64,000 nucleotides of DNA, taken from IMG/VR virus record IMGVR_UViG_3300035180_001778, positions 248,001 through 312,000 of that record; one strand, given 5' to 3'. The notes beneath the pieces are model-generated. The model made no database searches. It was not told where the DNA came from and worked only from the letters and a program-made list of their open reading frames with translations. Shown one piece after another: positions 1,655-54,160 of the stretch. The position numbers were made by a program, and so were the translations under genes. Each line of letters starts with the position of its first letter. Position 1 is the first letter of the stretch.

Positions 1655-1708
1655 ATAATACAGGAAGGCCCTGGTTGCGATCAACCAAGGCCTTCCAATT
1701 CGAGAATT

Positions 1709-2060
1709 TGGAGCTGCCGGGAATCGAACCCGGGTCCGCAAAGCTTCCGTTCCGCTTTCGTTTACGTGCGTAGCCGCCATATCCCTGGCGGCTGGGTTCG
1801 CGGATTTGGCCGCGAACTATCTCGTCTGCTTGTCTCGAAGGGGTAGCCGCCGAGCACGCTTCCCCTTCCAGCCCTGTGGGTTGACACCGGAAATCCAGCT
1901 ACTAGGACGATCTTGCTGGCCGATGGTCACTACGCAGCCATCTGCATGGGGACGAGAGCGTTGTCGTTCGCAGGTATACGTCTCGATTGATTACGGCGGG
2001 TCGAGAGCCGCCTACACGCAAGCTGGAACTTCCAATCCACGTCGAAACCAAGTCAGCCCC
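1709..2060 (-). ncRNA. ssrA: tmRNA
   Basis: 5' GGGGCTGACTTGGTTTCGAC, G3.U70 acceptor, 3' T arm, tag ANDNALVPMQMAA then TAG TGA. Confidence 0.95.
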
Positions 2061-2134
2061 GAGTTGTGCTACCGATGAATTGAATCACCTTCGCCCACTA
2101 CTTGGGTGGGTCAAGCGATGGTAGCTCGCTTTCG

Positions 2135-2219
2135 TGCCGTCGACAGGAGTCGAACCTGCCCTCCCTTTCGGGAACATGCACCTCAAGCATGCGCGTCTGC
2201 CAAGATCCGCCACGACGGC
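2135..2219 (-). tRNA. tRNA-Leu(GAG), long variable arm
   Basis: Loop TT-GAG-GT, class II cloverleaf. Confidence 0.9.
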
Positions 2220-2240
2220 CTATCGTACCCAAACCGAGAG

Positions 2241-2323
2241 TGTGTCACCCCGGGATCGAACCGGGCTACCAACGAAGGTCCTGCTTATCAGGCAGGTGTG
2301 GTCAACCAGCTCCCTCGTGACAC
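2241..2323 (-). tRNA. tRNA with GAT (Ile) anticodon and atypical long variable arm
   Basis: CCTGC-CTGATAA-GCAGG; about 14-nt variable region. Confidence 0.7.
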
Positions 2324-2326
2324 ATG

Positions 2327-2473
2327 TGAGGAAAGAGAGAAGGAAAAAGGATGAAACAGAAGCAGGGCGTTTCCGGGCTTCACACCAATTCCGAGGTTCC
2401 TCGGGGTTAAGCGCTTAGAAGGAGGCAGCCACGCTGGGGTTTTACCGTTTGGGGGGTTAGTTCTCTTTCCTCA
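2327..2473 (-). ncRNA. candidate structured RNA
   Basis: Ends pair (TGAGGAAAGAGA / TCTCTTTCCTCA); internal hairpins. Confidence 0.35.
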
Positions 2474-2501
2474 GCCCGGCTTTCACCGGGCCCGGGACCC
2501 G

Positions 2502-3011
2502 CTACTCGAAGAGCGCGGGGTCCAAGTTTTCGATTTCGATCGAAGTGGAGTTCGCCATTCCGATCACGGCCTGGAGGCCGCTGTGCTTCCTTCCAGCCTG
2601 GAGGGCCCGTCCCATCGCCGCCTTGGGCTCGATGGTGGCCACCATGTACTCCGTCCCATCCCCGATGGTGCGGGAATCGGGCATGTAGGAAGTGTCCTTC
2701 TCCTTGATGGCGGACTTCCACATCTTCTGGAGACGACCCATCCCACCAACCCGCTTGATGGCCTCAGCGAGGCTCATGGGCTTCCCGTCGACCGTGACGG
2801 GGACCGCCAGGTTGTACCGCATCTGGGCGGTCTGGAGGACCGCCAGAGCGTCCTCTGCGGTCGAGTACTCCTCGGCGAGGTTGGCGGGCGAGACCGGATC
2901 CTTCTCGGAGGGGTAGGCCTTCAGGGAACCCGAGAACTGCTTCTCGGGCAGCTCCCGGCGAAGCTCCCACATCTTGATCGCATCCCGAAGCTCGAATACA
3001 GTGACCTTCAT
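2502..3011 (-). CDS. helical protein, DIP1984/DUF6847-like
   Basis: LQTAQMRYNL...MSLAEAIK...LQAVIGMANST pattern; family from memory. Confidence 0.55.
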   Translation of the reverse strand: MKVTVFELRDAIKMWELRRELPEKQFSGSLKAYPSEKDPVSPANLAEEYSTAEDALAVLQTAQMRYNLAVPVTVDGKPMSLAEAIKRVGGMGRLQKMWKSAIKEKDTSYMPDSRTIGDGTEYMVATIEPKAAMGRALQAGRKHSGLQAVIGMANSTSIEIENLDPALFE

Positions 3012-3216
3012 TACCATCCTCATCTTCTCGAAGATTTCGTCGAGAAGATGAGGCCAGCTCTCCAGTCTCCCACTCGGTCCCACAGTGATTGCAGGTAGGA
3101 ATGGGAAGATCGTCAGGAACCGGGTAGACCCCTCGACGATACCCGGCTGTGCGACCGGGCCCTGTTGTAGGGGTGACGACCCCAACGCCGCATTCGGCAC
3201 ACTTGAAACTCAACAT
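3008..3216 (-). CDS. YgiT/MqsA-type zinc-finger protein (3' end uncertain, probable frameshift)
   Basis: CAECG...PTCNHCGTEW. Confidence 0.5.
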
Positions 3217-3290
3217 GGTGCGGGGTAGGGGAATCGGACCCCTCTGATCTAGCTTGTCGAGCTAGTGCTCTCCCAGAGAACGAACCCCGC
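3216..3290 (-). tRNA. tRNA-Val(GAC)
   Basis: CTAGC-TCGACAA-GCTAG, CCA; T loop GTCCGA. Confidence 0.8.
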
Positions 3291-3291
3291 A

Positions 3292-3366
3292 TGGTGAGGC
3301 GATTGGGAGTTGAACCCAAGACAGGTTCCTTATCAGAGAACCCAGGTGACCGTACCGTCCCGCCTC
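3292..3366 (-). tRNA. tRNA-Ile(GAT)
   Basis: Loop CT-GAT-AA, CCA. Confidence 0.75.
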
Positions 3367-3622
3367 ATGTTTCTCTTACACCAACTTGGGGGTGAACCTC
3401 AAGTTTTCTTCGTAGTCCGAGGAGGAATTGAACCCCTACACAGCCACCTATAATGAGGCCGACGCCGACCGTACGTCTTAGGGCTCGGCCCAGAAATGCG
3501 TCTCCGGACCCTTGTCGGTGCCGAAGTCGACTTCCCCTGTGGTCGCCTCCAGGTGTTACCTGGCTTCCGCTCAAGGGCTGCAAAGGATCTCACCGGAGTG
3601 ACCCGGGCTCAATCCAGTGCAT

Positions 3623-3697
3623 TGGTACCACGAACGGGAGTCGAACCCGTACCTCTTGCATCTCAGGCAAGTGCCTCTGCCGTTGGGCTACCGTGGC
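3623..3697 (-). tRNA. tRNA-Leu(GAG), short variable loop
   Basis: CTTGC-CTGAGAT-GCAAG, CCA. Confidence 0.85.
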
Positions 3698-3784
3698 ATT
3701 GTATCCGGACCCCATGCAACTGGGGCAACTCACAGGAGGTTGCACTCCAATGAGTCGAGAGTCCCGGATGGCCTCTCGTTTTTC

Positions 3785-3862
3785 TGGTGCTGACGAAGGG
3801 AGTCGAACCCTCACATTGTCTTCCTTCTGAGGGAAGCGCCTCGCCATTTGGGCTACGTCAGC
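3785..3862 (-). tRNA. tRNA-Leu(CAG), short variable loop
   Basis: CTTCC-CTCAGAA-GGAAG, CCA. Confidence 0.85.
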
Positions 3863-4017
3863 GTATTCTCGATCTCTTTCAACTTCATCAAGACCTTGTG
3901 CTTCAAGTTCTGGAGTTCGACCCTCAGAGCGTAGGCCTGAAGCATTTGAGGTCCCTGGAGCTTGTTGATACGCTTCCAGAACTTTTTGGACTTCGGTCCG
4001 CTGTATCGTCTTTTCAT
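3853..4017 (-). CDS. small basic hypothetical protein
   Basis: ORF MKRRYSGPKSKKFW fills a tRNA spacer. Confidence 0.45.
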   Translation of the reverse strand: MKRRYSGPKSKKFWKRINKLQGPQMLQAYALRVELQNLKHKVLMKLKEIENTLT

Positions 4018-4023
4018 CTTGAG

Positions 4024-4097: not shown

Positions 4098-4098
4098 A

Positions 4099-6054: not shown

Positions 6055-6548
6055 TTACACCAAGTCTCGGTCCTCGATCAACCGAATCGCTCTTTGTTGG
6101 AGAGAAAAGAGCAGAGCTGCTCGTTGCTGCTCCAAGGGGATGGGCCCCTTCTTCCTCGCCGAGAGGACCCCGAGGAGGCTGGAACGCTGCCATTCCAGCG
6201 TGTTCCTCAGAGCCTCCTCATCCCGCTGAAGCTCGATGCTGAGACCGTCGACCGCCGAGAGGACCTCCGCAAGGAAGCCATCCTTCTCGAAGGATACCGG
6301 GTCGATCCACTTGCGAGGACCGAACGGTATACAGCCCCGAGCTTGAAGGTACTGGTCGGAATCCCTGTCCCCTGTATTCGGAGGGCATACACATCGTACT
6401 CGACCCGGTCTTCCAGAGTGAGGGAAGACCTCTGAGGATCGAGCCAGCGAGGACCCCATGACTTCCACCCCCTTGCCAGGAGGTAGGCTCGCTCCCCCTC
6501 AGACAGGGGGCGAGGTTTCACCCGAGGAGAACTTGAGCTGTGAGCCAT
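6055..6548 (-). pseudogene. hypothetical protein split by a frameshift near 6360
   Basis: Internal repeat YLLARGW..WLDP / YLQARGC..WIDP lies in two frames. Confidence 0.5.
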
Positions 6549-6570
6549 GTTTCATCGTACACCAAAAGAG

Positions 6571-16893: not shown

Positions 16894-17053
16894 ATTTGTG
16901 AGATTGGGCCGGAATCGAACCGGCACCTCTTCCCTCTTGCGAGGCGTAATAACGGGGACTCCCCGTATGTGCTCCCTCTGGGCTGTTAGACCCTTACACC
17001 ACCAACCTCGGGTTCTTGTACAGAAAGAGACCCGAAACGATCAACCAAAATCG

Positions 17054-18290: not shown

Positions 18291-18355
18291 GCCGTCTCTA
18301 CATAGAGTCGAGCGAGACGATCAACCAGAAAGTTCCTTTCGGAAAGCCTAGCAAG

Positions 18356-19714: not shown

Positions 19715-20068
19715 ATGCTGAAACTCTTCCACGAGACACCCTCTTCCAACGTTTCTCAGATGAGAGCCGACGGATTCTTCAAATCCAACATCTATTCCGC
19801 CAGATGGTACACATTTACCGAAAGCTTCGAGGGGGCCCTTCGCTACACAGGGGGGGACCACGATCGGGTAGTCCTGGAATTCCAGTTGCCTCCCGCTGCG
19901 GTGAAAGAGTTTCTGTGGAAGTACCCCGGCACCACAGACTTCTACGGTCGCGCCTGGGCTCTACGGAAGCCCCTGCCCATCGAATACCTCAAGAAGGTGC
20001 ATCCGGTCCCGAAGGACTTCGAGATGCCCGACCATGGGGAGCCACTACTTTCCTACGATCGACGTTGA
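19715..20068 (+). CDS. ADP-ribosyltransferase-fold protein (Tpt1/DUF952-like, putative)
   Basis: LFHET...GF...YTFT...ALRY...VVLEF...LPIEYL pattern. Confidence 0.5.
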   Translation: MLKLFHETPSSNVSQMRADGFFKSNIYSARWYTFTESFEGALRYTGGDHDRVVLEFQLPPAAVKEFLWKYPGTTDFYGRAWALRKPLPIEYLKKVHPVPKDFEMPDHGEPLLSYDRR

Positions 20069-20101
20069 TCCGAACCTCGCACAGCCTGTAGAAAGACTCC
20101 C

Positions 20102-20722: not shown

Positions 20723-20793
20723 ATATACAGAGAGGCCACTACTTTCCTACGATCGACGTTGATCCGGACCGCCCCCGAGTTGTAGGACACTCC

Positions 20794-21610: not shown

Positions 21611-21735
21611 CTTCCGTGCGTCGTGAAGGAAACGGAGGACCCTCTTCCGATCGCTCCGCTCCAAGCTCTGAAACCATTCAGTCGTTTGCATGGGATGTCT
21701 TACACCATCCCACATGTAGGTGCTAACGATTTCGG

Positions 21736-23581: not shown

Positions 23582-24316
23582 ATGCAGAAAGCTTGCCCTG
23601 TTTGCTCCTCGATCTACGAAGCTGACCCGAAGAGACTGCTTCACGGGAGACAGACGACATGTAGCAGGTCATGCTCATACAAGTATCGACAACCCTCACA
23701 GGCCATCGAAAAAACTTGTACGTCATGTGGGCGCATCTACACCAGAAGTCCGAGTCACGTGAAGGCAAAACACGGAGCCGAATACTGTTCACGTCCTTGT
23801 CATTTCAAGGGAAGAACCATGGGGTTGACACCCAGAGAAGTAACTCACCCATACGAGTACACACCAGAGTCAAAAGCGAAACAGATTGCTTCAGCGCGAA
23901 CTCCTCAGGGTAAGCGAGTCTTCCACCCTCTAACGTGCCTCAACTGCAAGTCCCTATTCGAGGATCCCAATTGGGGCAGGCACCGCAAGAGCGGTATGAT
24001 CTTCTGTTCTCTCCTATGCTGCAACAACTATCGCAAGGGTGAGAAGAACCCTGCTTGGCGAGGAGGGCACCCAAGTTATTACGGCCCCGATTGGAGTAGA
24101 ATGAGACGCGAGACTCTGCAACGCGATAACCACACATGCCAGCGTTGCAAAGCTACCCCAAAAGGGAGACGACATGACGTCCATCATATCAAGCCTGTGG
24201 TTACATTTGAGAACCCAAACGATGCACACACGATAGAGAATCTTATCACCCTGTGCCGTCCGTGTCACATGCGGGTAGAATGGCACGGAGTAGATTGGGA
24301 TCTACCCCAGCTCTAA
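23582..24316 (+). CDS. HNH endonuclease with repeated zinc ribbons
   Basis: CxxC/CSxxC repeats; RDNHTCQRC, VHHIKP, NLITLCRPCH. Confidence 0.85.
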   Translation: MQKACPVCSSIYEADPKRLLHGRQTTCSRSCSYKYRQPSQAIEKTCTSCGRIYTRSPSHVKAKHGAEYCSRPCHFKGRTMGLTPREVTHPYEYTPESKAKQIASARTPQGKRVFHPLTCLNCKSLFEDPNWGRHRKSGMIFCSLLCCNNYRKGEKNPAWRGGHPSYYGPDWSRMRRETLQRDNHTCQRCKATPKGRRHDVHHIKPVVTFENPNDAHTIENLITLCRPCHMRVEWHGVDWDLPQL

Positions 24317-29686: not shown

Positions 29687-29719
29687 CCGTCTAGATTACA
29701 CCATAGGGTGTCCTAGACG

Positions 29720-31336: not shown

Positions 31337-32134
31337 CTACACCGCGTCGAGCTGACGCTTGAAGAAGTCGAGGATCTTCGGCTTGACCTTCTGGTTCCAG
31401 TTCTGGGGCGAGCTGCTGTAGTTCGGGAGCTTGCCCTGGAGACCATGCGCAGGGTCACCCACGATCTCCTTCTCGTTGTACCCCTCGGTCAGGTACTTCA
31501 CGTAGAGACCCGCATCCGGGTGAACCTTCTGGGACAGCTCCCTGAGAAGGGACTTGAGCTGATGCTCAGGAATCAGCTCAGCGATATCCTCGAAGGCGTG
31601 GGGGTCCGAGATATCGAGGTTCGTCTCTTCGCCATCCGCGTCCTCTTGGGTGATCGACTTCTCCCGGTGACGCTGCTTCGTCTTGTCGTTGACGACGTTG
31701 ATCCCCTGGCGAACGACGCCGGTCATCACGTAGCCCTGCGCTTCCTTGAGCGGGCACTTGTCACGCAGACCCTTCGATCCCCCCTGAAGGGTGAACCGGA
31801 TCATGAACTCGACCATGGCGTTCTCCGCCAGCTCGGGATCTCGGAACTTGCCAATCAGCGTCTTGTAGACGCGGCTGGCGAAGTCCTGACCGTAGCCGCG
31901 GGGCAACGTGTCGGCCGGTTTTGAACTCTTGGGGTTCCAGCGTGGTCCCGGGTCGGGCATCTCCGTCACCCCGCGGAGTAGGAACTCCGCGAAGATCATC
32001 CGGCCGAAGGCTTCGGTCGAATCCGCGGCGAGCCGCAGAAAGAGATCCGCAACTCGAAGACCCCACGGAAGGGAGGCGTAGAGCCTTCGAGCGAGATTTT
32101 GGCTGGCGAGGATGAGGGTGGCAATACGATCCAT
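31337..32134 (-). CDS. sigma-70/ECF-like factor (divergent)
   Basis: Region 2-like (RDPELAENAMVE...GYV...RQGIN) and region 4-like (EGYNEKEI). Confidence 0.55.
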   Translation of the reverse strand: MDRIATLILASQNLARRLYASLPWGLRVADLFLRLAADSTEAFGRMIFAEFLLRGVTEMPDPGPRWNPKSSKPADTLPRGYGQDFASRVYKTLIGKFRDPELAENAMVEFMIRFTLQGGSKGLRDKCPLKEAQGYVMTGVVRQGINVVNDKTKQRHREKSITQEDADGEETNLDISDPHAFEDIAELIPEHQLKSLLRELSQKVHPDAGLYVKYLTEGYNEKEIVGDPAHGLQGKLPNYSSSPQNWNQKVKPKILDFFKRQLDAV

Positions 32135-32162: not shown

Positions 32163-33071
32163 CTACCCCAGGGTTCGAAGGGCTCGCTGAACACTCCGCC
32201 GTGTCTCGGCGGACAGGTCGAGCTTCTTGACCGCTTCGATGAGCGTGTAGCCGTCTCCGAGGAGATCCGTCAGCTCTTCCTTGTGGGCAAGCAGCTCGTC
32301 GGCGTTGATCGAACCCATCACAGAGCTGATATCCGCCGAAGCTTCCATCTGCCCGTGCGCGTTCGGATCTGCAACCAGCTCTTCCCACGCGAAGGGAACG
32401 ACACCCTCCGGACCCGCGAAGGTCGCTCCGAACGCATCCGCCGGGCGTTCCTTCTCACGCCGCTTCCGGGTCCGAACCCAGTTCGCGAAGTGATTCTTCA
32501 CCGCTTGCCTCAAGTAGTTCTTGAAGTGAGTGGGCGAGGCGACCGGCGTCGGAAGGCTCACGAACACATTCGAGAACACACCCATCTCAGCGAGCTTCAG
32601 GACTTCCTTGGTCTTGAACTTCGCCTTGGTCGACGCGGGGCCTCCCTCTTCAGGGTTGATGGGCGAGGGCATCCATGCAACCCAGCGCTCCCCCTTGGGA
32701 GAACGAAGCCGAGTGACTCCCCGCTGCTTCCCTTCAGGAGCATGGCCGCCCATGACGTCCAGGAAAATCTTGGAGTAGGACCAGTGGGCCGACCGCCACA
32801 CCTGGTACGTCACCCCCAAGAGGGCGCACGCCTCCAGCATGGTGACATGGTCCGGAACCGTGTGATTGCTCTGGAGCGAAGCAACGTACTTCTCCAGCAC
32901 CTCGGAGCTGATGATCTTCAGCCAGATGTGCTGAAGAAGGTCCTGTGGTGTTTGATCCACACGGCCGAAACGCTGGACGGCGTAGGCGATGAACGTCCCG
33001 TACTCCTTCTGGAGTGCGGTGTAATCGCGCGGGATTTCCGCGGGCCATGTCGAAATCGAAGTCCGTTCCAT
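32163..33071 (-). CDS. ECF-type sigma factor with large insertion
   Basis: QDLLQHIWLKI, FKNYLRQAVKNHFANWVR, GYTLIEAVKKLDLS. Confidence 0.7.
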   Translation of the reverse strand: MERTSISTWPAEIPRDYTALQKEYGTFIAYAVQRFGRVDQTPQDLLQHIWLKIISSEVLEKYVASLQSNHTVPDHVTMLEACALLGVTYQVWRSAHWSYSKIFLDVMGGHAPEGKQRGVTRLRSPKGERWVAWMPSPINPEEGGPASTKAKFKTKEVLKLAEMGVFSNVFVSLPTPVASPTHFKNYLRQAVKNHFANWVRTRKRREKERPADAFGATFAGPEGVVPFAWEELVADPNAHGQMEASADISSVMGSINADELLAHKEELTDLLGDGYTLIEAVKKLDLSAETRRSVQRALRTLG

Positions 33072-33265
33072 ATTCCACCTACAATCGCGCGCGCCTCGCG
33101 ATCAACTACTTCATACACCAACCCCAAAATCTGTCCCGCACACGTCCCGAAGGCTTTCGCCCTTCAGGGGTGAGGGTTCTCCCGGCAGCCCATCGTGGGG
33201 CCCGCCACGGAATTCGCGTGTATTCTCGCATTGATCCGAACGAATCCGCGGTGTACTACCTGAAG

Positions 33266-35922: not shown

Positions 35923-35983
35923 GCCCCGTCTACATTTTGACGGGGCTCAGGATCAACTATTTTCCGATAAGCGGGCGAAAGGT

Positions 35984-36559: not shown

Positions 36560-36803
36560 TTCCGGGGCTTGTCCTTCGCGTCTTTCGCGAGAGCTTCCGC
36601 CGTCGCTTGTTCCAGCTCTTCAGGTGAAGAGGCTTCTACTTTGGGGCCGATCGCGGCCACCTTCAGCAGGTCTTGTCCTCGGTGGACGAAGAAGGCTCCG
36701 TACCGTCCAAGCGGACTGCGTACGGGCACGCACTTGTTGGGTTTTCCGCCTGAGCCCATGGGTAGTTCCTCATGTGTGTTCTACAGGGGAACCATGTGGG
36801 TGA

Positions 36804-37163
36804 TCAACCCTTTTTCTTGAGACCTTCGAGGAAGGCCATCTCGTAGATCATCGCCGAGAACGTATCCGTGTTCCCCTCCCATGTGCCTTCTCCCCGATGC
36901 CGGCCCTGGGTGTACGTGTGGTACTCGTCGCCCACGACGCGGACGATTCGGACCTCGCAGTCTTCGAGGATCCCCGTGAAGAGGACCTCGCCGAGCGGAG
37001 GCTGAGCGCCGGGTCCGATGAACGTGCAGCAGGGACAGTACTTGCAACCGGGGGCGTTGTTTTCGCTCCAGTCGAAGTGCCGCTCATACGTGTGCCCGCA
37101 CCCCTCTTGGATGCACTTGGCGTTCTGATCATGCTTGGGGTCGAACTCGTGCGGATTCTTCAT
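36804..37163 (-). CDS. hypothetical Cys/His-rich protein
   Basis: CGHTYERHFD..GCKYC. Confidence 0.55.
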   Translation of the reverse strand: MKNPHEFDPKHDQNAKCIQEGCGHTYERHFDWSENNAPGCKYCPCCTFIGPGAQPPLGEVLFTGILEDCEVRIVRVVGDEYHTYTQGRHRGEGTWEGNTDTFSAMIYEMAFLEGLKKKG

Positions 37164-37354: not shown

Positions 37355-37714
37355 CTACAGGGTCAAGGAGCGCAGGATCAACCCCAACCCGTGGGACGCG
37401 CCAACAGCCCGCTCGAACGTGGACTTGATCACGCGGTAGAGATCGGCCGGGGCCCACCCCTTCCGGGCCGTACCCGTCGCGTGGAACTCCTCCGCCTTCA
37501 TGTGGCAGGACGCACAGAGCGCGATGCCGTTTTCCTTCACGTAGCCCCCATGCGGCATGAGGGTCCTATCCGTGATGTGGTGCGCGTCCCGCTCGTGTTC
37601 CGCGTCCTTCTCGGTCGACACGAAGAGGCACCCGGGCCCATGGCAGCGGTACTTCGCCCGCTTGAACACAGCCTTGCGGAAATCAGCCCGCATCGTCTTC
37701 TTCGTTGTACTCAT
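37355..37714 (-). CDS. HNH endonuclease-like protein
   Basis: DAHHITDR..NGIALCASCH. Confidence 0.75.
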   Translation of the reverse strand: MSTTKKTMRADFRKAVFKRAKYRCHGPGCLFVSTEKDAEHERDAHHITDRTLMPHGGYVKENGIALCASCHMKAEEFHATGTARKGWAPADLYRVIKSTFERAVGASHGLGLILRSLTL

Positions 37715-38237
37715 CGTTGTCTTCCCCCGATCGTCGTAAGCCCCATACCTCGTTTCTTGGAATCGAGTCAGGGCCTCCCGATATAGCTTCATGCGCCACA
37801 ACGACAGAGGGATCTTCCCTTGCCGAAGGAGCGCACCTTTTTCTTTTTGAAGGACAGCCAGGTCTTTGGACGTCGATTTGAAGAGCACCAGACGTGCCTT
37901 CAAGGACATCCATTCACCCGCGCTCAAGTCATCGACACGTTGGAGGAAGTACCTCGTCTCCTGTCGCATGAACTCCGAGATATTTCCCGCTTCACGGAAC
38001 CCGTGCCTTCCGCGTCCCCGCAGAGGCGAGAGGGTAGCCCACATCGAGGGCAAAATCCAAGGGCCGACAGCTCAACCCGCGCAGGTTCCGGGAGGTATCC
38101 CCACTCTTTGGGAGTCTCTCGTACCGCCCGTAGCCGGGGTCGGAGAACCTCCCAGTAGGATTCCAGCTCGTCCGAGTCGTTCATCCCTCCGTAGTACACC
38201 GACTTGGGGGACGACTGAATCCCTGGAGCCTCTACAG

Positions 38238-39327
38238 TCAGAGGGCTCCAGGGATCAACCAGCGGGAATCATTTCCAGGTGAAAGGGACCTCGCCTTCTT
38301 TGGGGAGGGGGGACGGCTCCAGTCGGCGATGAGCTTCGTGAGGGTCTCGATGTCCTTCTTGAGGCTCCGGAGCGTGCTCTTCGTCTGGGAAATCTCGCTG
38401 TCCAGGCGCATCTTCCAGCCCGCCGAAGCAGACGTCATGGGTTCACGGTTCGTCATGCGAGAAGAGAGCGTCGTGATTTCGCCCGCTTCGAGCTTGCGCA
38501 GGTACTCCGTCTCGGACACAACGCGCTCTTCCAGGAAGACTTTGAGGGCCTTCGTGCCCTCGCAGCTCAGCTCGAAGGGCGGGTACTTCAGGCCGAAGCA
38601 CTGGCCGACCACGTAGCCCCAACCGGGGCGCTGGTAGCCGTGAAGCATCATCTGGGGCACCGTCTTGCCCGCGAGAAGCCGAAGCTTGTGGTTCGCGAAG
38701 CAGCACGAGCATGTGCCCGTGTTATCGCGCGTTCGGGGCTTCTTGTCCGCCTTCTCTTCGTCCGGGGTCTTCGTCCGGGGTCTTCATCCCGAGGGCGTCA
38801 CTGACCTGCTTGATGAGGTCCGTGTTGGCGACGAGCCAGGGCATGACCTCGTAGATCCGGAGGTACTTGAGGGCGAAGACACCGTTGTTGCCGTAGCGGC
38901 TCTGCAACAGCTCGAACACTTTGCCGTTGGGCGCCGTGAAGCGGTAGGCTTCCGCCGCCTGCCACACTTTGTATTCCGTCCCGAAGAGCGGGGTCGTCGA
39001 GAAACCCGGCGTCCACGAGCGGAAGTCCTCGACTTCCATGAAGTACTTGGTGCCAGCCACCGGCTCCGCGGGAAGCTCCGAGAGTTCTTCCCTCTTGAGG
39101 GTCTCGTACATCGAGCGAGCGACGCTCTCATCGCGTTCGCCGAGGATTTCCTTGGCCTCGGGCGAGCTGAGGTGGCCGTACATCTTGATCAGGCCGACGA
39201 ACTTCTCGGCCTTCCAGCCACCCAGGAACTCCAGGGCGCTGATGAGCTGCTTGATCGAGACCGAAGCAGTCGCACCCTTGCGGATTTTCTCCAGGAGGGC
39301 GGTCATCTTGGGGGTTAGCGTTTTCAT
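38238..39327 (-). pseudogene. single hypothetical gene broken by a 13-bp tandem duplication (38755-38780)
   Basis: Removing one tcttcgtccgggg unit joins KTPDE to EKADKKPRTRDNTGTCSCC..LHGYQRPG. Confidence 0.65.
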
Positions 39328-39369
39328 GAGGGTCCTACAGATGTCGCCCGGTCCCGATCAACCTGATTC

Positions 39370-40020: not shown

Positions 40021-40100
40021 CCTACAAATTGGAGACCCGAGCGATCAACCGAACACAACCAACAAAATCTGGTTGATCCAGGGGACCCCCAAAATGTAGA
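40021..40100. promoter_or_regulatory. divergent pair of GTTGATC-N16-TGTA promoters (example of more than 20 copies)
   Basis: Minus copy 40023-40049, plus copy 40072-40098. Confidence 0.75.
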
Positions 40101-40993: not shown

Positions 40994-41070
40994 AAGAAGG
41001 GAGTCTGAGAAATCAGGCTCCCTTCTTCATTTCCGGTTGATCGACAGCTACCCCAGTCTGTAGTCTCCTT

Positions 41071-42396: not shown

Positions 42397-42417
42397 CCGG
42401 GGCCACTACACCAGAAA

Positions 42418-42903: not shown

Positions 42904-42923
42904 GACCCCCTAATACACCGGAA

Positions 42924-43244: not shown

Positions 43245-43326
43245 GCCCGAGGTACAAGACCCCAAGGGTCAGGATCAACCTGATTTTTCTTGTTGATCCT
43301 GACCCTTCATTCTCTGTAGGACCCCC

Positions 43327-44188: not shown

Positions 44189-44230
44189 TCTGGTTGATCG
44201 GGGGCCGACCCCCCGTGTATTACCCTCACT

Positions 44231-48046: not shown

Positions 48047-48065
48047 CCCCCATTTACACCAAGAG

Positions 48066-48764: not shown

Positions 48765-49050
48765 ATCGGGAACACGGATCGGAGCTGGGGGATTCCCTCG
48801 GCGGTAGGCCCCGTTGTTCGTTCCGGGCCCGAATTCTTCGAGGGTGCTGAGAAGGTTCCGGTCTTTGGGCCCCGCTTCACTCCAGAAGTAGACCTTGGCA
48901 CGGAAGAGGTTCGCCGAAGGCTTCAGGTTGTCGACTCGCCGGGTGTTTGGATCCAGGCGGAGAGAAGCGACCCCGTCTTGAAATGGAACGCGACTTCCGG
49001 GGGCAGCTCAGATCCCACACCAAAGGCATGGGCGGAGCTACACCAGAAAT

Positions 49051-49419: not shown

Positions 49420-49492
49420 GGAGCATTCTACACCGGGACGCCTTCCACGATCAACCAGTTGATCCCCTGCTCGATCTATTTGTAGTGAGGGG

Positions 49493-49708: not shown

Positions 49709-49738
49709 GTCTTGGGGGATCGGTGTAAGATCCCCAAG

Positions 49739-50011: not shown

Positions 50012-50419
50012 GTGTTTGGTACCCTCGTAGCGAAGTCTGGGAGTTTCAAGATCGGTTCAGGTGAATTCGAGTTCACTCGTGTGGAGACCCCCACCCGCAA
50101 GGGAGTAATACACTGGGATCGTGTTTCGTGCGAAGTGCTTACTTTTACTGCGGCGGGGGAATACTTCTTCCTTGGGGGAAAGGAGGTTTCAGCTTCTCTC
50201 GACGAGTTCTCCGCCGTCGCGAATGAAGAAGACGAGTTTTACGAGGGCCCGTTTCTGCTTCTTCGAGGAGAACAACCTGAAGTCAGGGAGGGGGCAACAC
50301 AGATTCTTCATCTGGTGCTTGCGCGTGTTCTTACGTACCCGTCGGAAATGTCCCAGACGGAGTTGTTTGACGCTGTACGATCGGTTGATCGGAATCCCTC
50401 TCGATCTGTAGGAGACTGA
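50012..50419 (+). CDS. hypothetical protein
   Basis: ORF. Confidence 0.5.
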   Translation: MFGTLVAKSGSFKIGSGEFEFTRVETPTRKGVIHWDRVSCEVLTFTAAGEYFFLGGKEVSASLDEFSAVANEEDEFYEGPFLLLRGEQPEVREGATQILHLVLARVLTYPSEMSQTELFDAVRSVDRNPSRSVGD

Positions 50420-50421: not shown

Positions 50422-50718
50422 ATGTACGACATTGTCAAAGGCACCCGCATTCGGGCCGAAGTCTTCAGAGCAAAGGAGCTGGGCACGTACTCCATCGCTG
50501 GAGCCCAACCCAAGGTGATTGGCGACTTCATCACCGTCGTGGGCAAGGTGACGCACATCTACGGCGACCACCCCACGGCTCCGACCAAGTACGAGATCCA
50601 CGTCCAGCCGGATGACGGTGGGCCTGAAGTCGTCATCGGCGAGAGCTGCATCCGCGCGATTCAGCCCGCGCGCGATTCAGCCCGCGGTCGGTTGATCCGA
50701 AACCTCCTACTCCTGTAG
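50422..50718 (+). CDS. hypothetical protein (16-bp duplication near 3' end)
   Basis: Promoter motif and AGGAG RBS. Confidence 0.55.
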   Translation: MYDIVKGTRIRAEVFRAKELGTYSIAGAQPKVIGDFITVVGKVTHIYGDHPTAPTKYEIHVQPDDGGPEVVIGESCIRAIQPARDSARGRLIRNLLLL

Positions 50719-50726
50719 AGACGAAC

Positions 50727-52055
50727 ATGCGATTCCCCCTCTCCCTCGACTGTACCAACCTTCCCAACTGGGGTGCCCGTGAGGGTATCCGCAAGCTTCT
50801 CCAGAACGGGGTCGACGCCGAAACGGAGTTCTCCGCTCCCCTCAACGTGAGCTACCGCAAGGAAACGGCCAAGCTCGTCATCAAGAACGACGGGACCGTG
50901 ATCCCGCTCAAGGCTCTTCTCACGGGCTTCACCACGAAGCGTGGCAAGAAGGGTCTTCGCGGCCAGTACGGCGAGGGTCTCCCCCAAGGCGTGCTCTCGC
51001 TCCTCCGAGCGGGGCATTCGGTGAAGATCCGCTCGGGGTCCGAAGTCTGGGTCCCCAGCATCGAAGCTCACGAGCAAGCGGGAGCGGACGTTCTGGTCTT
51101 CAACATCTCGAAGGGGCACAAGGACGAGAACCGGGTTGCCATCGAGATCGGCAACATCTCGGAAGAGACCTACAAGGCCCTTCCGGAGCACTTCCTGTTC
51201 TTGTCGAAGGAGACGACCAGCGACCGCGTGAAGACGTCCATGGGTACGCTCCTGCTCGACAAGCGCTATGCTGGCAACATCTACGCGCAGGGCATCTGGG
51301 TCTGCAACGACCCCAAGCTCACCATGGGCTACGACTTCTCGGACATCGAGACGGATCGTGATCGGAAGATGGTCGCCAGCTACGACCTCCAGCTCCACTG
51401 CCGTCGCGTCTGGCAAGAGGCTCTGGCCACGCGGCCGGACCTCGTGAAGAAGTTCATCGTGCTCCTCAACGAGCAAGCTCCGGACGTCGAGGGTATCGAC
51501 GCCTACAGCACCTACGCCTTCTCGGATGAAGTGAAGACTGCCGTGGCGGCCGACTTCACGGAGAAGCACGGCAAGGACGCCGTCCCGGTTCGGTCGCTTC
51601 TGGAGAGCGCCGAAGTCGAGCACCTCGGCCGCACGGGTCGCATCGTCCCCATGCCCCTCAAGGCGATCCTGGAGTCCGTGCTCGGGACGGTCGAGCAAGT
51701 CAAAGAGCGGTTCCGCTCGGAGGCGCAGCGGCTCTACGGCTGGTCGGAGCTGGGTGTGGTCGAGAAGACGCACCTGGAGCAGGCCATCGCCCTCGTGACC
51801 AAGGAAGAGGAGGTCACTCTCGGGGACATCGACATCACGGACTTCCGCGATCCGGGTCTCCGCGGCCTCTACCGCGACGGGAAGATCCTGCTCTCGAAGA
51901 GCATCCTGGCGGATCGGGATCTGACGCTTCGGGTTCTCGTTCACGAAGTCGCGCACCGTTCGGGAGGCGACGGCGAGAAGGGTCACGTCTCCGAGATCGA
52001 GCGCATCTGGGCCGGGATCACTGGCCAGCTCCGCAACCTGGTGGGTAACGTCTGA
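50727..52055 (+). CDS. GHKL ATPase-like domain plus HExxH metallopeptidase
   Basis: LLQNGVD, NDG, GQYGEGL, HEVAH. Confidence 0.75.
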   Translation: MRFPLSLDCTNLPNWGAREGIRKLLQNGVDAETEFSAPLNVSYRKETAKLVIKNDGTVIPLKALLTGFTTKRGKKGLRGQYGEGLPQGVLSLLRAGHSVKIRSGSEVWVPSIEAHEQAGADVLVFNISKGHKDENRVAIEIGNISEETYKALPEHFLFLSKETTSDRVKTSMGTLLLDKRYAGNIYAQGIWVCNDPKLTMGYDFSDIETDRDRKMVASYDLQLHCRRVWQEALATRPDLVKKFIVLLNEQAPDVEGIDAYSTYAFSDEVKTAVAADFTEKHGKDAVPVRSLLESAEVEHLGRTGRIVPMPLKAILESVLGTVEQVKERFRSEAQRLYGWSELGVVEKTHLEQAIALVTKEEEVTLGDIDITDFRDPGLRGLYRDGKILLSKSILADRDLTLRVLVHEVAHRSGGDGEKGHVSEIERIWAGITGQLRNLVGNV

Positions 52056-52191
52056 TGCTGATGTACGTTCTTTCGGGTGTGATCGGAGGGGTCATCGGAT
52101 CCCTCCTCACGGGGGCGGTTGCCTACTACCTCATCAACAAAGTCCTCGCAGGGGTCTTGAAGGCCTTCGGGGACATCAAGACGAGCGCGAA

Positions 52192-52562
52192 ATGAAACCC
52201 GATAAAACGTGCAACGACCCTCCCGAGGTACCGACGGAGCCCGTGTTTCAGACGGTGCTCTACCAGAGCTGGGAGGAGAGCGAGCGTGGCTGGGGGAGGC
52301 GGCCTGATGGGTTCTCCCTGCATCTCCCTGCATCTCCCTGCATCTCACCGCAGCCCATCGGAAAGAGTATCTCGCGGCACTCAACAAGAACAAGCTGTCC
52401 TACGTGCCGGATGAGTACGAAACTCCGGCCGGCGAGCCGATCGAAGTCGAGGTCCCTGTCGAGGTCGTGCGCTACCTCCGCGAAAAAGGCGGGAATATCC
52501 GCAGCTACGAGAAGGTGGCGATCGTCACCCGCCGGATGTTGACGGGCTTCAAGATCGGCTGA
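52192..52562 (+). pseudogene. hypothetical protein frameshifted by a 10-bp triplication
   Basis: WEESERGWG.RPDGFSLH followed by tctccctgca x3. Confidence 0.55.
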
Positions 52563-52615
52563 CGAAATTCTCAGAGCGAGGTTGATCGGTGGCAGCCTCG
52601 CTCTGTAGAGAACCC

Positions 52616-52912
52616 ATGAGCCGCAACCTACATGTCGAGACCACCATCCTCGTTGACCGTGATGGTGAAGAAGTGGAAGTCACGCTGAAGGGCGAGGTTT
52701 CCCCCGGGGTTGCAGGCCGTTACACGGGCGCCCCCGAGAACTGCTACCCCTCCGAGGACCCGGAAGTCCAGGACTACTCGGCGACCGTTGATGGCCAGCC
52801 CTTCGAGCTGGACGCGGACGAGAAGAAGGACGCCGAAGAGGCCCTGATCGATAGGGCCAGCGAAGACGACCTCTGCGGTCCGGACGGCGATTCGGACGAC
52901 GCCGACTACTGA
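52616..52912 (+). CDS. acidic hypothetical protein
   Basis: Promoter motif; GAPENCYPSE. Confidence 0.6.
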   Translation: MSRNLHVETTILVDRDGEEVEVTLKGEVSPGVAGRYTGAPENCYPSEDPEVQDYSATVDGQPFELDADEKKDAEEALIDRASEDDLCGPDGDSDDADY

Positions 52913-53166
52913 AAGAAAGAGGACGCGAATGCTCGCTCTACTACAGTTTGCCCCGCGCTGAAAACGGGGCTGAAAGGGCTGACAACCCCGGAACCTACGT
53001 GCGGCGCACATGTAGGCCCGACGATGAAGAAAGCCGGGAGATCGTGGGATCTCCCGGCTTTCTTCATTTCCAAGGGTCCGCCGCAGACTTTCGAAAAGTA
53101 TCGCGAGTGAGTTGATCGGGACGACCCACAAAGTGTACAGGAGACAAGAAAGACGAGGATACGAAA

Positions 53167-54102
53167 ATGACGAAGCCGACCACGAAGAAGACCAAGACCT
53201 CCGGCCGCTCCGCGACGCAGCGGATGACCGACAGCAAGATCGACGCGACGGCGGGTTCGATCGTGAACGTCCCGGTGAACGACATAACGTTCGCCCCCAA
53301 GGGTTCGGCTCTGGCCCACCCCCGCGAGCACTACCCGATCAACGAGGCCCTTCGCGACGACATCGTCAAGAACGGCGTGCAGAAGCCGATCAAGGTTCGC
53401 GACGACGGGAACGACTCGAACGGCAAGCGGATCCTGACCTTGGTTGACGGCGCTCAGCGGACCATCAACGGCAAGGCGGCTCAGGCCATCCTTGTGGAGC
53501 GCGGGCTCCTCGCGAAGGCTGGCAACGTCCTCCGCGTCAAGGTGGTGTTCGTCACGGGGAGCGATGCGGAGTGCCTCCTGGAGCGTCTCCGGAGCAACAC
53601 CGACCCGCTGAAGGTGGCCGACAGCCTCAGCGTGCTCTCCGCCACCTTCATTCAGCTCGACCTGCTGGGTGTGTCCGTTTCGGAGATGGTCGCGGTCGCC
53701 CCCAAGGGCATCGGGCCCCGGGAGATCGACGCTCTCCTCCGCTTCGGCAACCTCCTCCCGGAGGTTCAGATCCGGTTCGACAACGGCTCGGCTCCGGTCG
53801 GGCTCCTCTCCGCGGTGCTCGATGCCTCGCGGAACGAGCAGGGGAAGAAGCTCGACGAGCTGCTCTCCGCTGGGGTGAAGACCGGGAAGGGCGCCACGCG
53901 GGCCCAGAACAAGGCGGATGGCAAGACGGAGCGCCCGCATCCCGCCAAGGTCCGGAAGCTCATCGCGGCTCTGGAGGCTCTCCCGGGTAGCACGCAAGTC
54001 GAGGGGATCATCCTCGGCCTCAAGCTCTCGCTCGGAGAGAACTTCCCCCTTCACCTCCCCAAGGACGTGAAGGACGCTCTCTCGGGAGTTCTGAGCAAGT
54101 GA
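53167..54102 (+). CDS. ParB-like protein
   Basis: HPR..LRDDIVKNGVQKPI..LVDGAQR, then HTH-like region. Confidence 0.75.
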   Translation: MTKPTTKKTKTSGRSATQRMTDSKIDATAGSIVNVPVNDITFAPKGSALAHPREHYPINEALRDDIVKNGVQKPIKVRDDGNDSNGKRILTLVDGAQRTINGKAAQAILVERGLLAKAGNVLRVKVVFVTGSDAECLLERLRSNTDPLKVADSLSVLSATFIQLDLLGVSVSEMVAVAPKGIGPREIDALLRFGNLLPEVQIRFDNGSAPVGLLSAVLDASRNEQGKKLDELLSAGVKTGKGATRAQNKADGKTERPHPAKVRKLIAALEALPGSTQVEGIILGLKLSLGENFPLHLPKDVKDALSGVLSK

Positions 54103-54160
54103 ACGGAAGAGGGGTGCGGAGGTTGATCCTCCCACCCCTCTTGGTGTACGTAGAAGTAAC

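What the first reader, a model, noticed from the sequence alone, without database searches (positions are those of the whole stretch)
1659..54149. Strict GTTGATC-N16-TGTA promoter, often giving very short leaders
Exact 16-nt spacing at plus-strand 20064, 20758, 40072, 41036, 43292, 44193, 49458, 50384, 50691, 52581, 53111, 54122 and minus-strand (TACA at) 1659, 6056, 17019, 18299, 33080, 35931, 37356, 38233, 39336, 40023, 43253, 49429. The ATG often follows TGTA by 8-12 nt, implying leaderless or near-leaderless mRNAs. A second class has GGTGTA 8-10 nt before the ATG without the -35 box (931, 6558, 29697, 38195, 42407, 42914, 56886, 61853).
Basis: seen in the sequence. Interest (0 to 1): 0.6.

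Follow-up and report, generated by a model that had tools for sequence, protein, structure and literature searches.

The report
Phage-specific promoter giving leaderless mRNAs
An uncultivated giant bacteriophage puts an almost invariant two-box promoter (GTTGATC, 16 bases, TGTA) directly in front of more than 80 genes and tRNA clusters. Most of the resulting messages probably begin at the start codon itself, and the promoter is probably read by a sigma factor that the phage encodes.

Summary
GTTGATC-N16-TGTA occurs 26 times in the window (0.01 expected) and 87 times in the 350-kb IMG/VR phage record that holds it. The spacing is nearly invariant: 87 sites at N16, 2 at N15, 0 at N17.

- **Position:** every window site points at a downstream gene or tRNA or precedes a candidate non-coding RNA (site 15). 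In 68 of 87 genome sites an ATG follows TGTA by 8-12 nt, and in 47 by exactly 8.
- **Conservation:** in a relative 89% identical, the boxes differ at 2.7% of positions and the spacer at 19%. More distant huge phages use the same motif.
- **Second class:** yGGTGTA-N10-ATG without a -35 box is also real, with 51 sites, and is equally conserved.
- **Polymerase:** no RNA polymerase gene was found. A divergent ECF-like sigma factor gene lies in the window and sits behind the motif in five lineages.

Best model: a phage-sigma promoter with boxes at -35..-29 and -12..-9, starting at the A nine bases after TGTA, which usually makes the mRNA leaderless. Nobody has mapped the start sites, and no RNA data exist. 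It is a new member of a known kind (compare phage 7-11 gp47, phiEco32 gp36 and phiYS40).

The parts
1659..1685 (-). Class I site between the tmRNA (1708-2060) and a tRNA (1581-1654, anticodon CAA). TGTA ends only 4 nt before the mature tRNA 5' end, so the geometry is anomalous.
6056..6082 (-). Class I site 51 nt upstream of tRNA-Ala 5933-6004, at the head of a tRNA cluster.
17019..17045 (-). Class I site 125 nt upstream of tRNA-Asn 16817-16893, at the head of a tRNA cluster.
18299..18325 (-). Class I site, N8 to ATG 18290 (ORF 18105-18290, 61 aa).
20064..20090 (+). Class I site, N11 to ATG 20102 (ORF 20102-20722, 206 aa).
20758..20784 (+). Class I site, N9 to ATG 20794 (ORF 20794-21012, 72 aa).
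33080..33106 (-). Class I site, N8 to ATG 33071, the start of the sigma-like gene.
32163..33071 (-). Gene for a 302-aa divergent sigma-70-family (ECF-like) protein. It is the candidate reader of the motif. Region 2-like and region 4-like segments are separated by an insertion of about 100 aa.
35931..35957 (-). Class I site, N8 to ATG 35922 (ORF 35650-35922, 90 aa).
36782..36808 (-).
37356..37382 (-). Class I site, N8 to ATG 37347 (ORF 37165-37347, 60 aa).
38233..38259 (-). Class I site with C-A at TGTA+8/+9 and no nearby ATG. The class II box at 38195-38200 follows it.
39336..39362 (-). Class I site, N8 to ATG 39327 (ORF 38722-39327, 201 aa).
40023..40049 (-). Class I site, N8 to ATG 40014 (37 aa). 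It stands back to back with the site at 40072.
40072..40098 (+). Class I site, N10 to ATG 40109 (ORF ends at 40993, about 294 aa).
41036..41062 (+). Class I site with no ORF start within 60 nt. It may give a non-coding RNA or a long leader.
43253..43279 (-). Class I site, N8 to ATG 43244 (106 aa). It stands back to back with the site at 43292.
43292..43318 (+). Class I site, N8 to ATG 43327 (ORF 43327-43899, 190 aa).
44193..44219 (+). Class I site, N11 to ATG 44231 (50 aa).
49429..49455 (-). Class I site with an ambiguous start: ATG at N2 (167-aa ORF) or GTG at N9 (122-aa ORF). It stands back to back with the site at 49458.
49458..49484 (+). Class I site, N8 to ATG 49493 (71 aa).
50384..50410 (+). 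Class I site, N11 to ATG 50422 (98 aa), with A at TGTA+9.
50691..50717 (+). Class I site, N9 to ATG 50727 (ORF 50727-52055, 442 aa).
52581..52607 (+). Class I site, N8 to ATG 52616 (98 aa).
53111..53137 (+). Class I site with a 29-nt gap to the ATG. It has C-A at TGTA+8/+9 and a GAGGA Shine-Dalgarno-like sequence 7 nt before ATG 53167 (311 aa).
54122..54148 (+). Class I site 12 nt before a tRNA with anticodon UCA (54161-54233).
60180..60206 (-).
931..936 (-). Class II box (GGTGTA), N10 to ATG 920 (139 aa).
6558..6563 (-). Class II box, N9 to ATG 6548 (113 aa).
21701..21706 (-). Class II box, N9 to ATG 21691 (160 aa).
23738..23743 (-). Class II box, N11 to ATG 23726 (55 aa).
29697..29702 (-). 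Class II box, N10 to ATG 29686 (273 aa).
31338..31343 (-). Class II box, N11 to ATG 31326 (387 aa, N6/N4 DNA methylase).
33250..33255 (+). Class II box, N10 to ATG 33266 (201 aa). It is divergent from the sigma gene.
38195..38200 (-). Class II box, N10 to ATG 38184 (86 aa).
42407..42412 (-). Class II box, N10 to ATG 42396 (207 aa).
42914..42919 (-). Class II box, N10 to ATG 42903 (161 aa).
48055..48060 (-). Class II box, N8 to ATG 48046 (384 aa, RlaP-type nucleotidyltransferase).
49039..49044 (-). Class II box, N9 to ATG 49029 (50 aa).
49722..49727 (+). Class II box, N11 to ATG 49739 (87 aa).
56886..56891 (-). Class II box, N10 to ATG 56875 (103 aa).
61853..61858 (-). Class II box, N10 to ATG 61842 (546 aa). 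A terminator-like hairpin lies just upstream.
62429..62434 (-). Class II box, N10 to ATG 62418 (73 aa).

Best explanation
GTTGATC-N16-TGTA is the core promoter of a phage-specific transcription programme in an uncultivated huge phage. The record is 350 kb, estimated 73% complete, and comes from sediment and microbial-mat metagenomes.

The two boxes are read together by a sigma-70-family factor on the host's core RNA polymerase. Transcription starts at the A nine bases after TGTA, usually preceded by C. That places GTTGATC at -35..-29 and TGTA at -12..-9.

In about 55% of sites that A is the A of the ATG, so the mRNA has no leader and needs no Shine-Dalgarno sequence. In most other sites the leader is 1-3 nt. 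A few sites have long leaders that carry a Shine-Dalgarno sequence, and others drive tRNA clusters or possible non-coding RNAs.

The most likely reader is the phage's own divergent ECF-like sigma factor (window 32163-33071, minus strand). Its gene sits behind the same promoter, which suggests positive autoregulation.

A second class, yGGTGTA with no -35 box and 10 nt before the ATG, drives replication, DNA-metabolism and some structural genes. It is read either by the same sigma in a -35-independent mode or by another phage factor.

What is shown: the motif, its strictness, its position, its conservation and its co-occurrence with the sigma gene. What is inferred: that it is a promoter (about 0.9), that the start is at TGTA+9 and so mostly leaderless (about 0.65), and that the phage sigma reads it (about 0.5).
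For: - **Frequency and strictness:** 26 sites against 0.01 expected. Genome-wide there are 87 sites, with spacing 87/2/0 for N16/N15/N17 and only 11 one-mismatch variants.
- **Position:** an ATG lies at N8-N12 in 68 of 87 sites, with a peak of 47 at N8. Sites also lie upstream of tRNAs where no translation is involved.
- **Conservation:** in G003 (89% identical) the boxes are 2.7% diverged, the spacer 19.4% and the upstream 30 nt 17.1% (p about 1e-12). The class II box is 0/120 diverged against 13% elsewhere.
- **Other phages:** the same two classes occur in more distant huge-phage contigs L143, L147 and L148, with a G or A before TTGATC.
- **Start-site signal:** where the ATG is not at N8, A at TGTA+9 is still enriched (18/39, p 2e-4) and C at +8 is 21/39. 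All seven sites with a long leader or no nearby ORF that carry A at +9 read C-A at +8/+9. C at -1 is 88% in class I against 43-49% in other genes.
- **Shine-Dalgarno use:** genes without a promoter box show SD-like cores peaking at -12..-10 (37% against a 12-16% background). Class II genes are at background (13%). Class I sites with gaps of 22-56 nt to the start codon carry an SD-like core 5-8 nt before the start (output).
- **No polymerase of its own:** PF00562, PF00623 and PF00940 gave no hit, and canonical sigma-70 promoters are not enriched.
- **Sigma candidate:** all 9 family members hit TIGR02937 (best 3.4e-7) and 7 of 9 hit Sigma70_r2. The gene is preceded by a class I site in G000, L143/L144, L147 and L148.
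- **Precedent:** phage 7-11 sigma gp47 reads GTAAtg-N16-aCTA and phiEco32 gp36 reads tAATGTAtA, with starts 6-9 bp downstream (PMC8948821).
Against: - No transcription start site data exist. No RNA run holds this DNA.
- Site 1659-1685 has TGTA only 4 nt before a mature tRNA 5' end, so a start at +9 would fall inside the tRNA.
- The two classes place TGTA 8 and 10 nt from the ATG. One sigma with one start rule does not explain both.
- The sigma assignment is weak for the window's own protein: 18.4 bits against a cut-off of 42.9. Its AlphaFold model is poor (pLDDT 57) and a PDB profile search found nothing.
- If the sigma needs its own promoter, how infection starts is unexplained.
- The record is incomplete, so a polymerase gene could lie in the missing part.
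- C at -1 is already common in other genes of this genome.
Confidence: 0.6

Rival explanations
1. Class I sites are early promoters read by a host sigma factor, either an alternative or ECF sigma or an unusual housekeeping sigma of an unknown host. The phage sigma, itself an early gene product, then reads class II (middle and late) promoters.
For: - Early genes must be expressed before any phage protein is made.
- The sigma gene lies behind class I.
- Class I heads small unknown genes and tRNAs in the genome arms. Class II heads ligase, helicase, clamp-loader-like and structural genes.
- Class II persists, while class I is absent, in the contig whose sigma homolog is only 33% identical (L145).
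- Perfect class I sites occur on a 3.7-kb contig of a 'delta proteobacterium' MAG unrelated to this phage, and at one conserved locus in two Sorangium genomes.
Against: - A strict scan of one genome for each of 185,579 species found only 7 stretches, and no genome has many.
- The motif is at chance level in the Sorangium and Acidipila genomes.
- The -10 box lacks the A-11 and T-7 that group 1 sigmas require.
- The phage sigma has a region 4-like C-terminus, which fits a promoter with a -35 box better than class II, which has none.
Confidence: 0.25
2. The bipartite motif is an operator for a phage DNA-binding regulator, for example the sigma region 4-like protein at G000 212424-213134. It overlaps promoters that are defined by other, weaker elements.
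For: - Very high information content and near-zero tolerance to mismatch resemble a dedicated DNA-binding protein.
- A widely conserved protein with a sigma4 fold and a second helix-turn-helix exists.
Against: - No other conserved element is seen around these sites, and canonical promoters are not enriched.
- The box positions match -35 and -10 geometry with a C-A start signal at +9.
- The TGTA box also works without the other box in class II.
- A distant huge phage checked (LR745208.1) has neither class of motif. Whether it encodes the sigma4-like protein was not checked.
Confidence: 0.08
3. The motif acts at the RNA level, as a 5'-UTR translation or processing signal in transcripts that start further upstream. 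TGTAGGA would then serve as a ribosome-binding sequence.
For: About 40% of sites read TGTAGGA, which contains AGGA 5 nt before the ATG. By a simple core search, 47% of class I genes count as SD-like.
Against: - The motif also precedes tRNA genes, and there the GGA is not kept while TGTA is.
- The spacer has neither conserved sequence nor a conserved fold, yet its length is invariant.
- Back-to-back divergent pairs leave no room for upstream promoters (sites 40023/40072, 43253/43279-43292, 49429/49458).
- Class II has no AGGA.
Confidence: 0.04

Closest known systems
Late promoters of Salmonella phage 7-11, read by the phage sigma gp47 (GTAAtg-N16-aCTA)
   Same: Both are bipartite. Both have a 16-bp spacer and a short 4-nt downstream box, are highly conserved and specific to the phage, and are read by host core polymerase plus a divergent phage sigma. 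In 7-11 the start lies 6-9 bp after the downstream box (PMC8948821).
   Different: The box sequences differ. Phage 7-11 has 8 promoters in an ordinary-sized phage, against 87 or more here in a genome over 350 kb. The 7-11 paper text does not mention leaderless transcripts. Here the sigma link is only inferred.
phiEco32 gp36-dependent middle and late promoters (tAATGTAtA)
   Same: It is a single -10-type element that contains TGTA, has no -35 box, and is read by a phage ECF-like sigma. It resembles class II here (yGGTGTA) (PMC8948821).
   Different: gp36 lacks region 4, whereas the sigma here has a region 4-like end. The flanking bases differ. The distance to the ATG is not fixed in phiEco32, as far as the paper says.
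Leaderless middle and late transcripts of Thermus phage phiYS40, and the '-10 region adjacent to ORFs' of Deinococcus-Thermus
   Same: The promoter -10 element is placed so that transcription starts at the start codon. Many genes are translated without a Shine-Dalgarno sequence (PMC3594737; PMC12340547).
   Different: Those use the host's housekeeping sigma and a TAnnnT-type -10. Here the -10 box is TGTA and a strict -35 box is present. The host is unknown and evidently uses Shine-Dalgarno sequences for leadered genes.
Bacterial ECF (group 4) sigma regulons, e.g. B. subtilis SigW TGAAAC-N16-CGTA (from my own knowledge)
   Same: Strict spacer of about 16 bp, a 4-nt -10 box ending in GTA, high information content, and a sigma gene behind its own promoter.
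   Different: The usual AAC in the -35 box and CGT in the -10 box are absent. The sigma carries an insertion of about 100 aa. The regulon is far larger than a typical ECF regulon and belongs to a virus.

Membership tests
Sigma-70-family bipartite (-35/-10) promoter | Two conserved boxes separated by a fixed spacer of about 16-18 bp | tested here: met
   N16 in 87 sites, N15 in 2, N17 in 0. The same holds in G003: 35 at N16.
Sigma-70-family bipartite (-35/-10) promoter | Sites lie upstream of, and point toward, transcription units, including non-coding genes | tested here: met
   68 of 87 sites have an ATG 8-12 nt downstream. Four window sites head tRNA genes. Divergent back-to-back pairs occur.
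Sigma-70-family bipartite (-35/-10) promoter | Boxes centred near -35 and -10 relative to a mapped start site | not testable with these tools
   No RNA run holds the DNA. Indirectly, C-A at TGTA+8/+9 would place the boxes at -35..-29 and -12..-9.
Housekeeping (group 1) sigma promoter | -10 hexamer of the TAnnnT type (A at -11, T at -7) | tested here: not met
   The box is TGTA followed by G, then G or A, then A. The canonical promoter scan found 1 match against 2.9 expected.
Housekeeping (group 1) sigma promoter | The motif is abundant in the host chromosome | tested here: inconclusive
   A strict scan of one genome per species found 7 stretches, none clustered in one genome apart from a 3.7-kb MAG contig. 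The host itself is unknown.
Phage-encoded or ECF-type sigma regulon | A cognate sigma with region 2 and region 4 is encoded by the same genome | tested here: inconclusive
   The protein from window 32163-33071(-) scores 18.4 bits on TIGR02937 (cut-off 42.9). All 9 family members hit it (best 3.4e-7) and 7 of 9 hit Sigma70_r2. The model is poor and the PDB search was blank.
Phage-encoded or ECF-type sigma regulon | The sigma gene is preceded by its own target promoter (autoregulation) | tested here: met
   A class I site with N8 to an in-frame ATG lies before the gene in G000, L143/L144, L147 and L148. It is absent in L145/L146, whose homolog is 33% identical and which show no class I sites at all.
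Phage-encoded or ECF-type sigma regulon | Holoenzyme carrying this sigma initiates at these sites | not testable with these tools
   This needs in vitro transcription or infection transcriptomics.
Classical ECF promoter consensus | AAC in the -35 box and CGT in the -10 box | tested here: not met
   The boxes are GTTGATC and TGTA.
Leaderless mRNA | The primary 5' end coincides with the first base of the start codon | not testable with these tools
   No RNA data exist.
Leaderless mRNA | The -10 element lies at a fixed short distance from the ATG, with no Shine-Dalgarno sequence between them | tested here: met
   N8 in 47 of 87 class I sites and N10 in 51 class II sites. Class II genes are at the SD background of 13%, against 37% for other genes.
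Phage with its own RNA polymerase (phiKZ, AR9, T7 or N4 type) | The genome encodes a multisubunit or single-subunit RNA polymerase | tested here: not met
   PF00562, PF00623 and PF00940 gave no match in six frames. None appeared among 28 large proteins scanned. Caveats: the record is 73% complete and phiKZ-type subunits are very divergent.

The most novel reading that the evidence does not exclude
A clade of huge phages runs a self-contained expression system. A phage ECF-like sigma is autoregulated and possibly delivered with the virion. It reads more than 100 near-identical promoters that are placed to the base, so most messages are born leaderless. Phage gene expression would then be orthogonal to the host at both transcription and translation initiation. 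The same promoter set also drives the phage's tRNA and tmRNA arsenal.
Probability: 0.3. Interest if true: 0.65.

Novelty: new member of a known kind. Interest (0 to 1): 0.5.

Why it matters
Transcription of uncultivated huge phages is almost unknown. This motif gives a ready map of transcription units for a clade found in sediment, mat and root metagenomes: more than 87 class I and about 80 class II units. It also corrects many start codons.

It points to a specific sigma factor and promoter pair that could be tested in vitro without culturing phage or host. If confirmed, it would be a compact, highly specific, possibly orthogonal sigma/promoter pair. It would also be a large natural set of leaderless genes in a system whose other genes use Shine-Dalgarno sequences.

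Tried and rejected
- **RNA evidence:** The look-up of sequencing runs found only four DNA runs from sediment and microbial mats, and no RNA. Read laying was therefore not used, because contigs cannot show RNA ends.
- **Host identification failed.**
  - No close cultured phage exists.
  - Atlas searches with the ligase and GroEL gave viral clusters.
  - The genome-contig scan gave only a MAG contig and Sorangium loci with no real similarity to the phage. The tblastx hits are chained noise.
  - Pfam was blank on the ORFs of those loci.
- **Distant huge phage:** LR745208.1 (PolA 35% identical) has neither motif class.
- **Sigma structure:** the AlphaFold model was too poor to search and the PDB profile search was blank.
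- **Second protein:** the sigma4-like protein folds well but matches only isolated region 4 domains. It is not a complete sigma.
- **Dam-type methylation** of the GATC inside the -35 box: GATC is neither avoided nor enriched (observed/expected 0.94), so there is no support.
- **Repeat-element idea rejected:** only 11 positions are conserved and the spacers are unrelated.
- **Literature:** a search for the heptamer found only primers.

Full report
**What the window is.** The window is bases 248,001-312,000 of a single 350,469-bp IMG/VR virus record. The record is linear, CheckV estimates it 73% complete, and its GC is 59%. The window carries 37 tRNA genes by ARAGORN and a tmRNA (Rfam confirms 29 of the tRNAs and the tmRNA). 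The record encodes portal, large terminase, baseplate J, family A DNA polymerase, UvrD-type helicase, NAD ligase, ribonucleotide reductase and GroEL. It is therefore an uncultivated huge tailed phage. Public runs that hold it are sediment and microbial-mat metagenomes, all DNA. The nearest record in the phage collection is a 485-kb metagenomic huge phage, with only 35% identity in PolA.

**Check of the observation.** GTTGATC-N16-TGTA occurs 26 times in the window against 0.01 expected. Two were missed, at 36782-36808 and 60180-60206, both on the minus strand.

- The whole record has 87 exact sites.
- The spacer length is nearly invariant: 87 at N16, 2 at N15, none at N17.
- Of 172 GTTGATC heptamers in the genome, 87 are followed by TGTA at N16, and no other tetramer follows more than 3 times. 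Only 11 one-mismatch variants exist, about five of them in promoter-like positions.
- The extended consensus is G-GTTGATC-S, a C-rich spacer, C-TGTA-G-R-A, four free bases, then C-ATG.
- Sites concentrate at 0-60 kb and 240-350 kb of the record and are rare in the structural and replication core at 60-240 kb.

**Relation to genes.** The first ATG after TGTA lies at N8 in 47 sites, N9 in 7, N10 in 1, N11 in 12 and N12 in 1.

Window sites at 1659, 6056, 17019 and 54122 head tRNA genes rather than ORFs, so the motif is not a translation signal. At those sites TGTA is kept but the following G-R-A is not. Three pairs of sites stand back to back on opposite strands (40023/40072, 43253/43292, 49429/49458), which leaves no room for other upstream promoters.

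**Second class.** GGTGTA-Nd-ATG peaks at d=10 with 51 sites, against 14 at d=9 and 12 at d=11. The consensus is t-Y-G-G-T-G-T-A with nothing conserved further upstream and only C before the ATG.

Class II occurs throughout the genome, including the core. It heads NAD ligase, a helicase, AAA/clamp-loader-like proteins, a DHH phosphoesterase and a 1078-aa protein of the tail region.

**Conservation.** IMG/VR holds two near-identical fragments (G001, G002) and a distinct relative, G003 (275 kb, 89% identical over 82% of its length). G003 has 35 class I sites, 21 of them at N8, and 44 class II sites at N10.

- In 27 orthologous class I pairs, the 11 box positions differ in 2.7% of cells. The spacer differs in 19.4% and the 30 nt upstream in 17.1% (Fisher p 6e-13 and 3e-12).
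- In 20 class II pairs, the hexamer never differs (0/120) against 13% around it (p 4e-7).

More distant phages were reached through homologs of the sigma-like protein. They are a 377-kb root-metagenome contig (L143, 52% identical), L147 (60%) and L148. All use both classes, with G or A before TTGATC and the same N16 and N8. A contig whose homolog is only 33% identical (L145) shows class II only, with N9-N15 to the ATG. The 485-kb phage LR745208.1 has neither class.

**Where transcription probably starts.** No RNA data exist, so this rests on sequence.

1. With the A of the N8 ATG as +1, GTTGATC lies at -35..-29 and TGTA at -12..-9. This is the standard sigma-70-family geometry.
2. In the 39 class I sites whose ATG is not at N8, A at TGTA+9 is still enriched (18/39 against a 20% base frequency, p 2e-4) and C at +8 is 21/39. 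All seven sites with a long leader or no nearby ORF that carry A at +9 read C-A at +8/+9. G003 shows the same (8/14).
3. C at -1 is 88% in class I genes, against 43-49% in other genes (p 3e-6).
4. Genes with no promoter box show Shine-Dalgarno-like cores with a clear peak at -12..-10 (37% against a 12-16% background), so the host uses the Shine-Dalgarno mechanism. Class II genes are at background (13%).
5. The five class I sites with gaps of 22-56 nt to their start codon each carry GAGG or GGAG 5-8 nt before the start (output).

These points together favour a start at TGTA+9. That gives leaderless mRNAs at N8 sites and 1-3-nt leaders at N9-N11 sites. For class II the start is less clear. The C-A signal sits at the ATG itself (TGTA+10/+11), two bases further from TGTA than in class I.

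**One misfit.** At 1659-1685 TGTA ends four bases before the 5' end of a tRNA whose ends are well defined. A start at +9 would fall inside the acceptor stem. Either this site starts closer to TGTA, or it serves downstream RNA while the tRNA comes from the tmRNA transcript upstream. I could not decide between these.

**Who reads it.** No polymerase gene was found. The Rpb2 and Rpb1 domains and the T7-type family gave no six-frame match. None appeared among 28 large proteins scanned. Two caveats apply: the record is incomplete and phiKZ-type subunits are very divergent.

Canonical sigma-70 promoters are not enriched (1 against 2.9 expected). The -10 box lacks the A-11 and T-7 that housekeeping sigmas need. 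A strict form of the motif was scanned against one genome for each of 185,579 species and gave only seven stretches. In the Sorangium, Acidipila and MAG genomes that were hit, the relaxed motif is at the level expected from codon usage. The motif is therefore not a general host promoter in any represented species.

Two sigma-related proteins are encoded.

- **The 302-aa protein at window 32163-33071 (minus strand).** Its N-terminus reads like region 2.1-2.2 and a central stretch like region 2.3-2.4. The C-terminus reads like the region 4.2 helix-turn-helix. An insertion of about 100 aa separates the N-terminal and central parts, and in two homologs it holds a zinc ribbon. All nine family members hit the sigma-70/ECF superfamily model (best E 3.4e-7) and seven hit Sigma70_r2 (best 2.6e-5). 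All of these hits fall below the curated cut-offs. Its structure model was poor (pLDDT 57) and a PDB profile search was blank. Its gene is directly preceded by a class I site, with N8 to an in-frame ATG, in G000, L143/L144, L147 and L148. That arrangement is typical of autoregulated ECF sigmas.
- **The 236-aa protein at G000 212424-213134.** It has a confident sigma region 4 fold (TM 0.8-0.86 to solved region 4 domains) plus a second helical helix-turn-helix domain, but no region 2. It is 60-76% identical in more than 690 clusters, many on contigs of 200-570 kb. It lies in a Shine-Dalgarno-led operon near terminase and portal.

I assign class I to the 302-aa sigma as the most likely reading, at about 0.5. 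Class II may be the same sigma acting without a -35 contact, with the upstream GG in the role that an extended -10 plays for sigma-70. It may instead involve the second protein. The main rival is that a host alternative sigma reads class I as early promoters and the phage sigma then reads class II. This fits the gene content of the two classes and the persistence of class II in L145.

**Comparison with known systems.**

- The closest documented parallels are phiEco32-like phages. Phage 7-11 sigma gp47 reads GTAAtg-N16-aCTA, and phiEco32 gp36, which lacks region 4, reads the single element tAATGTAtA. Starts lie 6-9 bp downstream in both (PMC8948821).
- Leaderless phage messages on a large scale are known from Thermus phage phiYS40 (PMC3594737).
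- A -10 element abutting ORFs is common in Deinococcus-Thermus (PMC12340547).
- The huge-phage survey mentions phage sigma-70 and AsiA-like genes but no promoters (PMC7162821).
- A text search for the heptamer found nothing relevant.

The finding is therefore a new, unusually large and unusually strict member of the class of phage-sigma promoters, combined with leaderless design. It is not a new kind of system.

**Limits.** The host is unknown. Start sites, timing and the sigma-promoter link are inferred. My gene calls come from a simple dicodon model, so counts per class are approximate.

Noticed in passing
window 81-17701 and 54161-54233: There are 37 tRNA genes and a tmRNA (1708-2060, tag ANDNALVPMQMAA). 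One tRNA has anticodon UCA (a UGA reader) and lies directly behind a class I site. TGA is nevertheless widely used as a stop codon here, for example in TGA-CCC-ATG gene junctions.
   Followed up: partly
window 1581-1654 (-): A tRNA with anticodon CAA (called Leu) has no long variable arm and an encoded CCA. Its 5' end lies 4 nt after the TGTA of a class I site, so it may be transcribed without a leader or may not be served by that promoter.
   Followed up: partly
G000 212424-213134 (L001:1147-1857, minus strand): A 236-aa protein has a sigma region 4 fold plus a second helix-turn-helix and no region 2. It is 60-76% identical in more than 690 protein clusters, many on contigs of 200-570 kb. It looks like a hallmark transcription protein of huge phages, of unknown role.
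   Followed up: partly
L118 (contig CAIXWQ010000077.1 of a 'delta proteobacterium' MAG), 1564-1602 and 1835-1873: Two divergent, perfect class I promoters, each with N8 to an ATG, lie on a 3.7-kb contig of 68% GC that has no similarity to this phage. A third similar site lies on another contig of the same MAG. This may be another phage lineage or a host regulon with the same specificity.
   Followed up: partly
L122 2849-2887 and L124 2740-2778 (Sorangium genomes): A single perfect class I site with N8 to the ATG of a 159-aa protein is conserved in two Sorangium species. It lies in a region of lower GC (51-66%) than I recall for Sorangium genomes. It may be chance.
   Followed up: partly
G000 244261-246215 (L115), minus strand: Four consecutive class I sites have C-A at +8/+9 but no ORF start nearby. 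They are candidate non-coding RNAs, and Rfam found only tRNAs in L115.
   Followed up: partly
whole record, e.g. G000 70037, 70760, 115222: Operon-internal genes are often joined as stop codon TGA, then CCC, then ATG, or overlap, with no Shine-Dalgarno sequence. This suggests translational coupling alongside Shine-Dalgarno-led and leaderless starts.
   Followed up: no
window 21736-23418, 24886-28959, 30163-31458: Two N6/N4 DNA methylases and a 1357-aa DUF6094 methyltransferase with a weak SNF2-like stretch lie close together. The same cluster is syntenic in L143. GATC, which lies inside the -35 box, is not depleted in the genome (observed/expected 0.94), while CTAG is (0.39).
   Followed up: partly
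alignment A1, columns 125-153 (P0006, P0007): Two sigma homologs carry a CxxC...CxxC zinc-ribbon insert, with DnaJ-like and anti-TRAP-like hits, in the region between the region 2.2-like and 2.3-like parts.
   Followed up: no
window 44193-44219, 40072-40098, 33080-33106: Several class I spacers are themselves GC-rich inverted repeats. Some class II boxes directly follow terminator-like hairpins (e.g. 61859-61885), so terminators and promoters are tightly packed.
   Followed up: no
LR745208.1 284999-289891: The PolA match in this 485-kb huge phage is split into 4 pieces over 4.9 kb, which suggests inteins, introns or insertions in its polymerase gene.
   Followed up: no
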